A DNA stretch of 63,912 bases, the filler included, from Octopus bimaculoides (taxonomy: Eukaryota), in assembly GCF_001194135.2 (NCBI RefSeq). It is 8 parts of 8 records of this genome, joined end to end, with 100 filler letters (N's around TTAATTAATTAA, not from the genome) between each part and the next. Parts side by side here need not be neighbours in the genome. Positions count along the whole stretch, not along the records: positions 58,515 to 62,719 come from NC_069009.1; 7 more parts are not named here. One strand, given 5' to 3'. Position 1 is the first letter of the stretch. Every line of letters begins with the position of its first letter. Position numbers and translations under genes: made by a program. Shown here in pieces: positions 58,328-62,719 of this stretch. Under the pieces are notes generated by a model, which searched no databases, was not told where the DNA came from, and saw nothing but the letters and a program-made list of their open reading frames with translations.

Positions 58328-58718
58328 TATGCATATATATATGTATATGCATATATATATATGCATATATATATATATGTATATAAGTATGTATATATAT
58401 ATATATATGTATATNNNNNNNNNNNNNNNNNNNNNNNNNNNNNNNNNNNNNNNNNNNNTTAATTAATTAANNNNNNNNNNNNNNNNNNNNNNNNNNNNNN
58501 NNNNNNNNNNNNNNGTGTGTGTGTGTGCATATACATACATATCTCTCTCTCTACCTATCTATCTATCTATCTATCTAAGTATACATATATATGTATATAT
58601 GTATGTATATATGCACATACATATATACATTCATACACACACATATACATGAGCATATGTGTTTGTAGATATGCATACATTTATACATATATACATATGT
58701 GTGCATATATATACATAT

Positions 58719-58765
<47 letters not shown>

Positions 58766-59109
58766 CACATACACACAAACACACACACACACACGCACAT
58801 ATATATATGTGCACACAAACATAAATTTCAGGTGTGCTAAAGTGACACACTACCTCTTCTCCCCAACCCTTTACCTGGTCTAAGCTTTGTTCTCTGACCT
58901 TCAGCATTTGGTTCCACATGCCCACCTCACCCCACCTCCAGCACACACACACGCATGCACACACACACACCGAGGAACATCCAGCCCAGGTATGCAAGGC
59001 AACCAAGTGCCACCTCCGTCACCACCACCACCGTCGTCGGCTGCATTCTCTGTCCTTTCCGACCTTTGACATTCCAGCCAGGCCAAACACAATAGACAGC
59101 ACGGTCATG

Positions 59110-59117
59110 TATAAAAG
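59110..59117 (+). promoter_or_regulatory. Candidate TATA box
   Basis: TATAAAAG 66 nt upstream of the ATG at 59176. Confidence 0.45.
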
Positions 59118-59175
59118 GGCTCTGCCATCAACCGCTTAAAAACATTTGCAATCTCTGTGCACCTTGCAGTGTACA

Positions 59176-59272
59176 ATGCAGAAAACTGCACGCTTCAACT
59201 GCATCCCATCTGCAGCCATTACCAAACTGGGGCCTCTCAAGCTGTTGGTGCCCTTTCTTGTGGCGACCCTAG
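59176..59272 (+). CDS. First coding exon of an unidentified secreted or membrane protein (signal peptide)
   Basis: MQKTARFNCIPSAAITKLGPLKLLVPFLVATL plus one G, then consensus donor AG|GTAAGT at 59273 (phase 1); splices in frame to 62337. Confidence 0.7.
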
Positions 59273-59334
59273 GTAAGTACCTAGAAGCGCTTGTGAGCGT
59301 TTTACTGTTGTTGTTGTTGTTGCTGTTACTTACA

Positions 59335-59536
59335 TTACTCTTTACTCTTTTACTTGTTTCAGTCATTTGACTGTGGCCATGCTGGAGCACCGCCTTTTTT
59401 AGTCGAGCTAATCGACCCCCAGGACTTANNNNNNNNNNCGCCTTTTTTAGTCGAGCTAATCGACCCCCAGGACTTATTCTTTGTAAGACTAGTACTTATT
59501 CTATCGGTCTCTTTTGCCGAACCGCTAAGTTACGGG
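59335..59536 (-). mobile_element. SINE family A, 3' half (in intron 1)
   Basis: ttgtttcagtcatttgactgtggccatgctggagcacc...gccgaaccgctaagttacgg. Confidence 0.88.
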
Positions 59537-59776
59537 TGGCACTTAAAAAGCACCAACCAATCGTGGCCGCTGCCAGCTTCCTCTGGCCCCTGTACCGGTG
59601 GCACGTAAAAAAAAGCACCCACTACACTCTCAGAGTGGTTGGCGTTAGGAAGGGCATCCAGCTGTAGAAACACTGCAAGCTCAGATTGGAGCCTGGTGCA
59701 GCCTCCTGGCTTCCCAGACCCCAGTCGAACCGTCCAACCCATGCCAGCATGGAAAACAGACGTTAAACGATGATGA

Positions 59777-59780
<4 letters not shown>
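59537..59780 (+). mobile_element. RTE LINE 3' tail with (GAT)n end (in intron 1); a second short tip at 59882-59942
   Basis: ggtggcacgtaaaa-agcacccactacactc...ggcgttaggaagggcatccagctgtagaaa...gttaaacgatgatgat. Confidence 0.88.
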
Positions 59781-59824
<44 letters not shown>

Positions 59825-59908
59825 AATAAAAGATGGAAGATGGAATGTACAAGAATATATTATTAGTCACAACAATTGTTTCAACCCGTACCAGCATGGA
59901 AAACGGAC

Positions 59909-59943
<35 letters not shown>

Positions 59944-60227
59944 GTTTGCAGATGTACTCATATCACATGATTTCGAACCCTGCGATAAACATTTAGTCCT
60001 CATCTGTGAGTATTACTGCCAAGGGCTAAATATACTTGTGTCACTGTGTGTGTATTGACCCTATAAATGTAGCGGCAAATTTGAAATGATTGAAGTGAAT
60101 GAAATTAGGAAAATACACAAGGATATTATTTACCAGCATGTATAAAGGATCTATTGTGGTTCTTGAGTTATTTGGACTCTTATTTCTAGCAATGCTGTAT
60201 ACTACCATGCACTCTCCCTGATTATAA

Positions 60228-60273
<46 letters not shown>

Positions 60274-60309
60274 TGTATGTATCTATCTATTTATTTATTT
60301 ATTTATCTA

Positions 60310-60355
60310 TTTATGGGTTTCAGCCGAGTGACTGTGGTCATGCTGGAGCACCACC
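60310..60355 (-). mobile_element. SINE family A 3' tip
   Basis: gtttcagccgagtgactgtggtcatgctggagcaccacc. Confidence 0.5.
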
Positions 60356-60775
60356 GTGATGTATGTATAACCNNNNNNNNNNNNNNNNNNNNNNNNNNNN
60401 NNNNNNNNNNNNNNNNNNNNNNNNNNNNNNNNNNNNNNNNNNNNNNNNNNNNNNNNNNNNNNNNNNNNNNNNNNNNNNNNNNNNNNNNNNNNNNNNNNNN
60501 NNNNNNNNNNNNNNNNNNNNNNNNNNNNNNNNNNNNNNNNNNNNNNNNNNNNNNNNNNNNNNNNNNNNNNNNNNNNNNNNNNNNNNNNNNNNNNNNNNNN
60601 NNNNNNNNNNNNNNNNNNNNNNNNNNNNNNNNNNNNNNNNNNNNNNNNNNNNNNNNNNNNNNNNNNNNNNNNNNNNNNNNATGAGTAATTTATGATCTCA
60701 TTCACACTTTCAGAACTTGACAGGTAAATCAAAACATTAACACCAAATTCATTTGTTGTATACACACTTATGCAT

Positions 60776-60818
<43 letters not shown>

Positions 60819-60944
60819 CATATATGTACAAGAATTATAATTTAGAAAAAATAATAAGGTACTCAGAGATCTGGATGGTTGTACATTTACACATTTTTAT
60901 TAATATGTCACATGTTTTCATAAATCTGGAGAATCTAACGATTC

Positions 60945-61175
60945 TTATTTCTTTATTGCCCACAAGGGGCTAAACATAGAGGGGACAAACAAGGACAGAC
61001 AAAGGGATTAAGTCGATTACATCGACCTCAGTGCGTAACTGGTACTTAATTTATCGACCCCCAAAAGGATGAAAGGCAAGGTCGACCTCGGCGGAATTTG
61101 AACTCGGAACGTAACGGCAGACGAAATACCGCTAAGCATTTCGCTCGGCTAGCTAACGTTTCTGTCAGCTCGCCA
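60945..61175 (-). mobile_element. SINE family B, full length, tail type 3
   Basis: Colinear with 54268-54498. Confidence 0.92.
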
Positions 61176-61271
61176 CAAGCTTCTTGCCCCACAGCATGCC
61201 TTAGCCATTTTTCAATGCTTTCTAGGGGTAAGCAATAAGGAAATAACAAGAGCTAGCCAAGGACAAAAATC

Positions 61272-62182
61272 GGATCTTTTTTAAAACAGGGGCCCACAGT
61301 ATTTTCTTAACAAAACACTTTGAAACTTGGAACACTGGTAGAATGTGTCATATAAAACATTTTTTCTCTTAGTCTTCTTAAAAAAAATGAAATCCCTAAG
61401 TTATTCCATGTTAAAGTTGTCGTATTTCTGTAATTTCAACCAATCACGGACGTCCATTCAGCCGATATACATTAAGTGCCGACTACATAAACAAACGATT
61501 CTGAAACAATTAACCCTAACCCTAAACCTAGGGTTAGGGTTAGGGTTAAAGCAAATTTAAAATGAAAAAAGCAAATAAAACGAAGGTATGGAGATTAAAT
61601 ACGCTTTACATCACTTAATCAGCAAAGGAGTAAATGTAAACAACTGAATACTTGTCAGTGATTGGTTGAAATTATCGAAATAAGACAATTTTTTACATGA
61701 AATAAATTCGAATACAAAAATATTTTTCTGTTCTANNNNNNNNNNTATTCCATGTTAAAGTTGTCGTATTTCTGTAATTTCAACCAATCACGGACGTCCA
61801 TTCAGCCGATATACATTAAGTGCCGACTACATAAACAAACGATTCTGAAACAATTAACCCTAACCCTAAACCTAGGGTTAGGGTTAGGGTTAAAGCAAAT
61901 TTAAAATGAAAAAAGCAAATAAAACGAAGGTATGGAGATTAAATACGCTTTACATCACTTAATCAGCAAAGGAGTAAATGTAAACAACTGAATACTTGTC
62001 AGTGATTGGTTGAAATTATCGAAATAAGACAATTTTTTACATGAAATAAATTCGAATACAAAAATATTTTTCTGTTCTATAACACAAAATAGATAAGTAT
62101 ACGAAGTTTGAAAGTCTTTCCATACCAAAAACACAACGTAAAACATTAATGAAAAATGTGGCCCCCGTTTTAAAATAGATCT
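61272..62182. mobile_element. MITE with terminal inverted repeats, 8-bp TSD and central telomeric palindrome (true length about 567 bp)
   Basis: TIRs gatctttttt aaaacaggggcccaca / tgtggcccccgttttaaaatagatc; direct repeat caaaaatc at 61264-61271 and 62183-62190; 344 bp of the span is an assembly duplication. Confidence 0.8.
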
Positions 62183-62238
62183 CAAAAATCTTGTTGCAAA
62201 CTGTGACGCTCTCTCTCATGCATCTCTCTCTCACACAG

Positions 62239-62244
62239 CGTTTG
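62239..62244 (+). CDS. Candidate 6-nt microexon (adds Ala-Phe)
   Basis: ctctctctcacacAG|CGTTTG|GTAAGT; frame-preserving between the phase 1 exons. Confidence 0.45.
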
Positions 62245-62336
62245 GTAAGTTCTTCTCCTCACTCTCTCGCTTTCTCTCCTTCTCTCTCACTCTCATTCAT
62301 TCTTTTTCCACTCTCTTTCTCTCACTCTTTCCACAG

Positions 62337-62510
62337 TGTCAGCTCCCGCCAAAGCAGGGATCTTCTCTACAACAGCAGAGAGGCCCAACGAAAATGCCAC
62401 CGAGTACATTACTGTGGACTGTGGACGCACTGTAACTCTAACCTCTGACAGGGCCGAAACCGTCGTCATTTCTTGTGTCAACAAGTCTATGTCGTTTAAG
62501 ATGGACACAC
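62337..62510 (+). CDS. Internal coding exon, phase 1-1, end of signal peptide and start of ectodomain
   Basis: Long polypyrimidine tract and cacAG| acceptor, 174-nt open frame (V)SAPAKAGIFSTTAERPNENATEYITVDCGRTVTLTSDRAETVVISCVNKSMSFKMDT, donor C|GTAAGT at 62511; sequons NAT and NKS. Confidence 0.75.
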
Positions 62511-62684
62511 GTAAGTACTCCTCACTTCTTTTCCATTCTCCCTCCCTCCTCCTGTCTGTCAATCTATATGTTTAGTTATCTATCTAACAATCTTGCACTT
62601 TATCTATCTATGTATCTATCTATCTATCTATCGTTCTATCCATCAGTCTATGAATCGGTCGCTTTATCTCTCTCTCTCTCTCTC

Positions 62685-62719
<35 letters not shown>

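What the first reader, a model, noticed from the sequence alone, without database searches (positions are those of the whole stretch)
62200..62250. Candidate 6-nt microexon that would lengthen the signal peptide core
Seen: branch-like TGAC (A at 62206), (CT)-rich tract, TGC at 62219-62221, AG, CGTTTG, then GTAAGT, 92 nt before the next acceptor. Inclusion keeps frame and changes ATL-V-SAP to ATL-AF-V-SAP, both added residues hydrophobic. Established: SRRM3/4-type (eMIC domain) neural microexons are short multiples of 3 nt with a UGC close to the 3' splice site. Inference: a regulated, possibly neural, microexon tuning protein targeting; it could equally be constitutive.
Basis: partly seen in the sequence, partly recalled or inferred. 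Interest (0 to 1): 0.7.

Follow-up and report, generated by a model that had tools for sequence, protein, structure and literature searches.

The report
Unproven 6-base exon candidate, octopus intron
The splice-site-like pair around six bases in the first intron of an uncharacterised Octopus bimaculoides secreted-protein gene is really there, but nothing shows it is used; it is most likely an unused chance look-alike, and if used it would alter only the signal peptide, which is probably cut off.

Summary
AG 62237-8, CGTTTG 62239-44 and GTAAGT 62245-50 lie 92 nt before the exon-2 acceptor. Inclusion is in frame and turns ATL-V-SAP into ATL-AF-V-SAP.

The piece is a short Octopus bimaculoides scaffold. 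It carries the first two coding exons of UniProt A0A0L8IH56, an orphan predicted secreted protein whose model uses the skipped junction.

The candidate donor is as good as the two annotated donors, but the acceptor is weak. One intronic GTAAGT is expected from base composition alone. Shuffled introns give such a candidate in 0.6% (strict, post-hoc definition) to 22% (loose definition) of cases.

No homologue, orthologue, transcript or second isoform could be found, so neither usage nor conservation could be tested.

The two added residues lie in the hydrophobic core upstream of the likely cleavage site AKA|G. If that site is right, the mature protein would not change.

My estimates are:
- about 0.6 that it is an unused or noise-level pseudo-microexon;
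- about 0.22 that it is a real microexon missed by annotation;

Junction-level RNA-seq or RT-PCR would decide it quickly. Interest is low.

The parts
59110..59117 (+). TATAAAAG, a TATA-box-like element 59-66 nt upstream of the start codon
   Evidence: Read directly from the sequence. Its role as a promoter element is inference.
59176..59272 (+). Coding part of exon 1 (97 nt, ends in phase 1). It encodes MQKTARFNCIPSAAITKLGPLKLLVPFLVATL plus the first base of the next codon, i.e. the n-region and hydrophobic core of a signal peptide.
   Evidence: It is 100% identical to the N-terminus of UniProt A0A0L8IH56.
59273..59278 (+). Exon 1 donor, TAG|GTAAGT
   Evidence: It ranks 1st of 191 GT sites in the piece on an approximate PWM.
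59273..62336 (+). Intron 1 as annotated (3064 nt in this assembly, including 328 N). It is filled with SINE-like fragments, microsatellites and duplications caused by assembly gaps.
62207..62236 (+). CT-rich tract upstream of the candidate acceptor (62207-62238 is 75% pyrimidine), interrupted by ATGCA and ACAC
62215..62219 (+). CTCAT, the best branch-site-like match (YTNAY). Its A at 62218 is 20 nt upstream of the AG.
62219..62221 (+). TGC (UGC) motif; its C lies 16 nt before the A of the AG
   Evidence: A second TGC is at 62195.
62237..62238 (+). Candidate acceptor AG (cacAG|C). It is weak, ranking 34th of 163 AG sites.
   Evidence: The nearest upstream AG is 58 nt away.
62239..62244 (+). Candidate 6-nt microexon CGTTTG. 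It would add Ala-Phe and keep the following Val.
62245..62250 (+). Candidate donor TTG|GTAAGT, with 7 contiguous positions complementary to the 5' end of U1
   Evidence: It ranks 2nd of 191 GT sites, between the two annotated donors. It is the only GTAAGT inside the intron.
62245..62336 (+). The 92-nt stretch that would become a mini-intron. It is 85% pyrimidine, has no AG apart from the one inside GTAAGT and the acceptor AG itself, and carries YTNAY motifs with their A at 62289, 62295, 62299 and 62324.
62337..62510 (+). Exon 2 (174 nt, phase 1-1). It encodes (V)SAPAKAGIFSTTAERPNENATEYITVDCGRTVTLTSDRAETVVISCVNKSMSFKMDT. The likely signal-peptidase site is AKA|GIF. There are two N-glycosylation sequons (NAT, NKS).
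   Evidence: The acceptor ranks 4th of 163 AG sites.
62511..62516 (+). Exon 2 donor, CAC|GTAAGT. The deposited protein model reads through it into the intron.

Best explanation
This is a chance pairing of splice-site-like sequences, a pseudo-microexon. It lies in the pyrimidine-rich 3' end of the first coding intron of an orphan Octopus bimaculoides gene for a predicted secreted glycoprotein (UniProt A0A0L8IH56).

The main mRNA joins the exon-1 donor (59273) directly to the strong acceptor at 62336, using a branch site inside the last 50 nt (A at 62289-62299). That is the junction in the deposited model.

The 6-nt unit has a consensus donor but a weak acceptor, and it has no room for exonic enhancers. 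By the well-established default for exons this short it is skipped. At most it is included at a low, tolerated level. Inclusion would be harmless: it is in frame and adds two hydrophobic residues (Ala-Phe) to the signal-peptide core upstream of the likely cleavage site, which would leave the mature protein unchanged.

Shown: the sequence anatomy, the gene identity, the chance estimates, the position within the signal peptide, and the absence of homologues.
Inferred: that the exon is not used, where the branch sites lie, and where the signal peptide is cleaved.
For: - The only deposited model for this locus uses the skipped junction.
- One GTAAGT per strand is expected in the piece from composition (0.94). 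Apart from the two annotated donors, exactly one is seen on the + strand and one on the - strand.
- 22% of dinucleotide-shuffled introns contain a candidate of the loose class.
- The candidate acceptor is weak, ranking 34th of 163 AG sites, against 4th for the real exon-2 acceptor.
- CT-rich low-complexity tracts are common in this piece, so the flanking pyrimidine tract costs nothing.
- There is no RNA structure around the site (z = -0.77). No Rfam family matches. The site is not part of any repeat unit.
- The insert lies in the core LLVPFLVATLV, upstream of AKA|GIF, so no mature-protein function is available for selection to act on.
- The host gene is an orphan with no relatives among 5.8 billion clustered proteins or 1.84 billion representatives and no Pfam domain. 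That is unlike the conserved genes that usually carry regulated microexons (PMC8797185; bioRxiv 10.64898/2026.09.05.749416).
- My base-rate estimate is that real 6-nt exons are several-fold rarer per intron than chance motifs of this quality. This is inference.
Against: - By the strict definition, only 0.6% of shuffled introns and 0.04% of shuffles of the last 300 nt produce such a unit.
- The donor is as good as the annotated ones, ranking 2nd of 191.
- Between 62179 and 62334, the only AG besides the one inside GTAAGT sits exactly 6 nt upstream of the only intronic GTAAGT, with a YTNAY branch motif 20 nt upstream.
- The unit is in frame, stop-free, and adds residues that suit a signal-peptide core.
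- The 92-nt stretch downstream has everything a short intron needs.
- The skipped model is weak evidence. Very short exons are routinely missed: 37% of 2984 mouse microexons were absent from GENCODE, including a validated 6-nt exon in Dctn2 (PMC7821500). A 6-nt omission also causes no frameshift that would alert an annotation pipeline (inference).
Confidence: 0.6

Rival explanations
1. It is a genuine 6-nt cassette or constitutive microexon that the 2015 draft annotation missed, and it is not specifically neural.

Proposed mechanism: the 92-nt pyrimidine-rich stretch is recognised as a short intron. U1 binds GTAAGT at 62245, a branch site at 62289-62299 is used, and the acceptor is 62336. Once that stretch is removed, the 62336 acceptor no longer exists. 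The exon-1 donor must then use AG 62238, with the branch A at 62218, which gives ATL-AF-V-SAP. The level of inclusion would be set by competition between the two donors for the 62336 acceptor.
For: - Consensus donor, ranking 2nd of 191.
- Strict shuffle frequency of 0.6%.
- An isolated AG and GTAAGT island inside an otherwise AG-free span of about 155 nt, with branch-site motifs for both introns.
- In frame, with a hydrophobic insert.
- Microexons of this size are often unannotated (PMC7821500; PMC8831610 abstract).
Against: - The acceptor is weak (34th of 163).
- There is no transcript or orthologue evidence of any kind.
- Exons shorter than about 25 nt are skipped by default unless specifically enhanced (established knowledge).
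- There is no consequence for the mature protein, if the predicted cleavage site is right.
- Base rates favour chance (inference).
Confidence: 0.22
2. The exon is neural and depends on SRRM (the eMIC domain of Srrm234). It is probably also repressed elsewhere by PTB bound to the CU-rich flanks, and it tunes ER targeting of the protein in neurons.
For: It matches the published eMIC cis code (PMC8797185):
- a length of 6 nt, a multiple of 3;
- a UGC close to the 3' splice site (C of the UGC 16 nt before the A of the AG);
- a UCUC-rich tract;
- a 58-nt AG-exclusion zone;
- a weak 3' splice site.

CU-rich sequence lies on both sides, as in PTB-repressed neural exons (PTBP1 repression of microexons: PMC8797185 introduction). 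The eMIC domain exists across bilaterians (PMC8797185 abstract), and octopus is included in vast-tools-based splicing analyses (bioRxiv 10.64898/2026.09.05.749416).
Against: - Every motif is short and is expected by chance in a CT-rich tract. One UGC in 40 nt has a probability of about 0.45.
- The branch motif CTCAT is not the strong CUAAY type.
- The gene is an orphan secreted protein with no sign of neural expression.
- The insert lies in a signal peptide that is probably removed, not on a protein interaction surface.
- No conservation can be shown.
Confidence: 0.08
3. It is a recursive-splicing (ratchet) site or RS-exon, or a non-splicing intronic U1-binding site, that helps process the intron of about 3 kb.
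For: A strong donor sequence lies immediately downstream of a 3' splice-site-like AG inside a long intron.
Against: Recursive removal needs a 5' splice site to be regenerated at the junction between exon 1 and the new sequence. Here that junction would read CCTAG|CGTTTG, with no GT, so the six bases could not be removed afterwards (direct reading). The site is 92 nt from the intron end, so it would not usefully subdivide the intron. There is no evidence for or against simple U1 binding.
Confidence: 0.03

Closest known systems
Neural microexons dependent on the eMIC domain of SRRM3/SRRM4 (Srrm234 in non-vertebrates)
   Same: Length 3-27 nt and a multiple of 3; UGC near the 3' splice site; UCUC-rich tract; long AG-exclusion zone; weak acceptor (PMC8797185).
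   Different: There is no evidence of inclusion, neural specificity, SRRM dependence or conservation. The host is an orphan secreted-protein gene. The insert lies in the signal peptide, not in the mature protein.
Unannotated very short microexons found only by dedicated mapping (e.g. the 6-nt Dctn2 exon, MicroExonator, PMC7821500)
   Same: Same size class, canonical AG/GT flanks, in frame, and absent from the reference annotation.
   Different: Those were discovered from reads and validated by ESTs and RT-PCR. This one is predicted from sequence alone.
Intronic pseudoexons (false exons): good-looking splice-site pairs that are never spliced (established knowledge)
   Same: Strong donor, mediocre acceptor, no conservation shown, deep in an intron full of repeats. 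The frequency is compatible with chance.
   Different: It is much shorter than the pseudoexons usually discussed, and by a strict definition it is rarer than chance would readily give (0.6%).
PTB-repressed neural exons flanked by CU-rich elements (c-src N1 type; from my own knowledge, and the PTBP1 statement in PMC8797185)
   Same: A very short exon with CUCUCU-type tracts both upstream and downstream.
   Different: PTB binding was not tested. CT-rich microsatellite-like DNA is common in this piece anyway.
Schistosome micro-exon genes (MEGs; PMC10526429)
   Same: A lophotrochozoan gene for a lineage-restricted secreted protein, with the signal peptide in the first exon, a possible symmetric exon as short as 6 bp, and long introns.
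   Different: MEGs consist of 10-20 consecutive tiny exons. Here the next exon is 174 nt, only one tiny exon is even proposed, and there is no sequence similarity.

Membership tests
eMIC/SRRM-dependent neural microexon | Exon of 3-27 nt that preserves the reading frame | tested here: met
   6 nt; phase 1-1; no stop codon; adds Ala-Phe.
eMIC/SRRM-dependent neural microexon | UGC motif close upstream of the 3' splice site | tested here: met
   TGC at 62219-62221, with its C 16 nt before the A of the AG. The chance probability is about 0.45 for a 40-nt window (my arithmetic), so this carries little weight.
eMIC/SRRM-dependent neural microexon | Long AG-exclusion zone, a UCUC-rich polypyrimidine tract, and a weak 3' splice site | tested here: met
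   The AG-exclusion zone is 58 nt, the tract is 75% pyrimidine with CTCTCTC runs, and the acceptor ranks 34th of 163. The criteria come from PMC8797185.
eMIC/SRRM-dependent neural microexon | Strong branch-point sequence (CUAAY in Drosophila) | tested here: inconclusive
   The best match is CTCAT (YTNAY) with its A at 62218. There is no CTAAY. The octopus branch-site consensus is not known to me.
eMIC/SRRM-dependent neural microexon | Inclusion in mRNA that is enriched in neural tissue and depends on SRRM | not testable with these tools
   No octopus transcript or read data can be reached. Protein and DNA searches returned only the skipped model or nothing.
eMIC/SRRM-dependent neural microexon | Evolutionary conservation of the exon and its flanks | not testable with these tools
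   No orthologue or paralogue was found in any library. No cephalopod genome collection is available.
Any real cassette microexon | Canonical AG and GT flanks with a usable branch site and tract on both sides | tested here: met
   cacAG|CGTTTG|GTAAGT. YTNAY motifs lie 20 nt upstream of the candidate acceptor, and at 37-47 nt upstream of the exon-2 acceptor.
Any real cassette microexon | Observed exon-exon junctions in RNA | not testable with these tools
   The only product on record is the skipped form. No entry holds ATLAFVSAP (one search returned a single hit).
Recursive splice site / RS-exon | A 5' splice site is regenerated at the junction of the upstream exon with the site | tested here: not met
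   The junction would read CCTAG|CGTTTG, with no GT.
Schistosome-type micro-exon gene (MEG) | The gene body is made of many (10-20) consecutive symmetric micro-exons following a signal-peptide exon | tested here: not met
   Exon 2 is 174 nt. The MEG definition is from PMC10526429. The rest of the gene lies outside the piece.
Secretory signal peptide encoded by exon 1 and followed by a phase-1 intron | A positively charged n-region, a hydrophobic core of 7-15 residues, small residues at -3 and -1, and a phase-1 intron near the cleavage site | tested here: met
   K3, R6, K17 and K22 form the n-region. The core is LLVPFLVATLV (mean Kyte-Doolittle score 2.74). AKA|GIF fits the -3/-1 rule. The intron is in phase 1, seven codons before the predicted cut. 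No dedicated predictor such as SignalP was available.

The most novel reading that the evidence does not exclude
A regulated 6-nt microexon (neural, SRRM/eMIC-activated and/or PTB-repressed) that lies wholly inside the hydrophobic core of a cleavable signal peptide of a cephalopod-specific secreted protein. Splicing would then tune ER targeting or secretion efficiency in a tissue-specific way without changing the mature protein. I know of no described microexon that works like this.
Probability: 0.07. Interest if true: 0.45.

Novelty: not a real feature. Interest (0 to 1): 0.2.

Why it matters
If the exon were used, it would be one more unannotated microexon in a poorly annotated cephalopod genome. 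It would also be an unusual one, because it would change only the signal peptide. That would be a small but neat case of splicing acting on protein targeting rather than on protein interactions.

If, as I think more likely, it is unused, it is a useful caution. In AT-rich genomes with long introns and many CT-rich tracts, a perfect GTAAGT a few bases after a CAG arises by chance often enough that sequence alone cannot establish a 6-nt exon. Either way the biological stakes are low, because the host is a fragmentary orphan gene of unknown function.

Tried and rejected
1. Homology route to test conservation. The word-indexed search of 5.8 billion proteins and the full HMMER scan of 1.84 billion representatives returned only the locus's own UniProt entry. 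Its cluster has one member, and no encoding contig is on record. No orthologue or paralogue could therefore be compared.

2. Domain identification. Pfam gave nothing significant; the best hit was CzcE at E = 0.12, which is noise.

3. Search for spliced or genomic copies elsewhere. An exact 22-mer from the start of exon 2 had 0 hits in JGI metagenome contigs. The other DNA collections hold only prokaryotes, phages and plasmids and were not used.

4. Structured RNA. There was no Rfam hit, and the fold of 62170-62360 is no better than shuffles (z = -0.77).

5. Repeat or transposon origin of the site. It is not part of any repeat within the piece. There are no tRNA-like genes.

6. A gene on the opposite strand. 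Only short ORFs typical of low-complexity sequence were found.

7. Recursive splicing. Rejected, because the junction does not regenerate a GT.

8. Retention of the 98 nt (acceptor 62238 used without the donor). Rejected, because 98 is not a multiple of 3. By my direct reading, the shifted frame stops inside exon 2.

9. An alternative first exon starting at ATG 62218. Rejected, because it would join exon 2 in a frame that stops after about 31 codons (direct reading).

10. Literature. No paper mentions A0A0L8IH56, and none describes a microexon in a signal peptide.

11. Structure prediction was not attempted. Only 51 residues of mature protein are available and there is no alignment.

Full report
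**What the piece is.** The stretch 58515-62719 is eukaryotic, AT-rich DNA full of microsatellites and SINE-like fragments, with three assembly gaps. That peptide is 100% identical to the first 90 residues of UniProt A0A0L8IH56, an uncharacterised 111-aa protein of Octopus bimaculoides. This is the only protein on record that resembles it. The word-indexed search of 5.8 billion clusters found one hit. The exhaustive HMMER scan of 1.84 billion representatives found the same single hit. Its cluster has one member, no encoding contig is on record, and Pfam finds no domain. The last 21 residues of the deposited model (RKYSSLLFHSPSLLLSVNLYV) are simply the intron after exon 2 read through the donor at 62511. 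The model is therefore a fragment cut off by the end of a short scaffold.

**Gene anatomy.**
- A TATAAAAG element sits at 59110-59117, and the ATG is at 59176.
- The coding part of exon 1 runs to 59272 (97 nt, phase 1), with donor TAG|GTAAGT.
- The annotated intron 1 is 59273-62336.
- Exon 2 is 62337-62510 (174 nt, phase 1-1), with donor CAC|GTAAGT.
- The N-terminus looks like a classical secretory signal. It has a basic n-region (K3, R6, K17, K22) and a hydrophobic core LLVPFLVATLV (mean Kyte-Doolittle score 2.74). The c-region SAPAKA fits the -3/-1 rule for cleavage at AKA|GIF.
- NAT and NKS glycosylation sequons follow in the mature part.
- A phase-1 intron just before the cleavage site is the usual arrangement for secreted proteins (established knowledge).

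**Checking the observation.**
- TGAC has its A at 62206, and TGC is at 62219-62221.
- The order is cacAG (62237-8), CGTTTG (62239-44), GTAAGT (62245-50), and then 92 nt to the acceptor at 62336.
- Inclusion reads G|CG TTT G|TG, so ATL-V-SAP becomes ATL-AF-V-SAP.
- Both diagnostic junction strings are right.

**How good are the sites?** I scored them with an approximate metazoan PWM written from memory, so only the ranks are meaningful.
- The candidate donor ranks 2nd of 191 GT sites in the piece. The two annotated donors rank 1st and 6th.
- The candidate acceptor ranks only 34th of 163 AG sites, while the true exon-2 acceptor ranks 4th.
- The nearest AG upstream of the candidate acceptor is 58 nt away.
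- In the 92-nt stretch the only AG before the acceptor is the one inside GTAAGT.
- That stretch is 85% pyrimidine and has four YTNAY motifs, so it could work as a short intron.

**Is it more than chance?**
- In the real intron this is the only frame-preserving, stop-free AG..GT pair of 3-30 nt with a donor matching at least 7 of 9 consensus positions and a tract of at least 60% pyrimidine.
- Among 2000 dinucleotide-preserving shuffles, 22% of introns carry at least one such unit.
- With a strict definition fitted after the fact (exact GTAAGT, tract at least 76% pyrimidine), 0.6% do. The figure is 0.04% when only the last 300 nt are shuffled.
- The rare component, GTAAGT, is expected 0.94 times per strand of the piece from composition. 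It is seen once on the minus strand and once on the plus strand outside the annotated donors.
- CT-rich tracts are common here; another CT run sits at about 62668-62692. A single UGC within 40 nt is close to a coin toss.
- I conclude that the pattern is somewhat unusual but not beyond chance.

**What could not be tested.** Usage in RNA, tissue specificity and conservation are the properties that define a real, and especially a neural, microexon.
- No cephalopod genome or transcript collection is among the tools.
- The protein libraries hold no second isoform and no orthologue.
- A scan of JGI metagenome contigs for a 22-mer from exon 2 found nothing.
- The skipped model is weak negative evidence. 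37% of 2984 mouse microexons were missing from GENCODE, and a 6-nt exon in Dctn2 was found only by dedicated mapping (PMC7821500). A missing 6 nt leaves the frame intact, so no pipeline would flag it (inference).

**Comparison with the eMIC code.** PMC8797185 describes eMIC-dependent exons as having long AG-exclusion zones, UGC close to the 3' splice site, long UCUC-rich tracts, strong branch sites and very weak 3' splice sites. It also notes that PTBP1 represses many of them.
- The candidate shows the UGC, the UCUC tract, a 58-nt AG-exclusion zone and a weak acceptor, and it is flanked by CU-rich sequence on both sides.
- All of these come almost free in a CT-rich tract.
- The branch motif is not of the strong CUAAY type.
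- Known conserved neural microexons sit in conserved signalling or trafficking proteins, where they are thought to alter interactions (bioRxiv 10.64898/2026.09.05.749416). This one would sit in an orphan gene, in the signal-peptide core. There it would lengthen the uncharged stretch from 15 to 17 residues and leave the predicted cleavage site and the mature protein unchanged.

**Other readings considered.**
- Recursive splicing is excluded, because the junction between exon 1 and the insert (CCTAG|CGTTTG) does not regenerate a GT.
- Using the upstream acceptor without the donor would add 98 nt and shift the frame into a stop within exon 2 (direct reading).
- An ATG at 62218 does not give an open alternative first exon (direct reading).
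- There is no structured RNA, no repeat membership, no tRNA-like element and no opposite-strand gene.
- Schistosome micro-exon genes are also lineage-restricted secreted proteins with exons as short as 6 bp (PMC10526429). They consist of 10-20 consecutive tiny exons, whereas here the next exon is 174 nt.

**Weighing.** My rough base-rate argument is inference. It takes microexon numbers, while the share of microexons that are 6 nt long is my own assumption.
- A real 6-nt exon with signals this good is expected in about 1 in 10,000 introns. A chance unit of exactly this length and quality is expected in about 6 in 10,000.
- The extra features raise the odds a few-fold: a hydrophobic in-frame insert, a branch motif, and an isolated AG/GTAAGT island in an AG-free tract.
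- The atypical host gene and the signal-peptide location lower them again.
- This gives about 0.3 that the exon is used at an appreciable level in some tissue, and within that about 0.08 for the neural SRRM-type mechanism.
- Constitutive inclusion is unlikely, given the weak acceptor and the known default skipping of very short exons.
- If the exon is used, the most plausible mechanism is intron definition of the 92-nt stretch. This would remove the 62336 acceptor and force the exon-1 donor onto AG 62238.

**Verdict.** The most likely reading (about 0.6) is a chance pseudo-microexon that is skipped, or included only at a harmless noise level. The question can be settled cheaply by counting the two junction k-mers in public octopus RNA-seq, or by RT-PCR, and by checking conservation in other octopus genomes. 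Interest is low.

Noticed in passing
window 62511-62575: The deposited protein A0A0L8IH56 (111 aa) ends with 21 residues (RKYSSLLFHSPSLLLSVNLYV) that are the intron after exon 2, translated through a perfect CAC|GTAAGT donor. The model is a truncated fragment of a larger gene whose remainder lies off this short scaffold.
   Followed up: yes
window 59391-59476 and 61402-62045: Two 100%-identical direct duplications each straddle a 10-N gap: 38 nt (59391-59428 = 59439-59476) and 300 nt (61402-61701 = 61746-62045; TRF reports a period of 344). These look like gap-closure or scaffolding artefacts. With the 308-N gap at 60373-60680, the true length of intron 1 is uncertain.
   Followed up: partly
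window 61413-61692 (duplicated at about 61757-62036): A palindromic element of about 280 nt. It has 49-nt inverted arms (82% complementary) around a perfect head-to-head telomere-like palindrome, TTAACCCTAACCCTAAACCT/AGGGTTAGGGTTAGGGTTAA, at 61510-61549. It may be a MITE-like or foldback element carrying interstitial (TTAGGG)n.
   Followed up: partly
window 59349-59394 and 60310-60355: Two copies (80% identical) of a SINE-like head, TTTCAG.C...TGACTGTGG.CATGCTGGAGCACC.CC. Related GC-rich fragments lie in the opposite orientation at about 59560-59780 and 60930-61160. These are typical interspersed repeats filling the intron, and none overlaps the candidate exon.
   Followed up: partly
window 59110-59176: TATAAAAG lies 59-66 nt upstream of the ATG, which suggests a TATA promoter with a very short 5' UTR. 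An acceptor-like ccttgcAG at 59163-59170, just before the ATG, means an upstream non-coding exon cannot be excluded.
   Followed up: no
window 62337-62510: Exon 2 is a symmetric phase 1-1 exon of 58 codons with two Cys residues and two N-glycosylation sequons. This is the exon class typical of shuffled extracellular modules, yet it has no detectable relative in 1.84 billion representative proteins.
   Followed up: partly
window 59909-59943, 58515-58810, 62601-62719: Dense microsatellites: (GAT)11.7, long (TA)n/(CA)n/(TATC)n arrays at both ends of the piece, and a CT run at about 62668-62692. The scaffold probably ends in unassemblable simple repeats.
   Followed up: no
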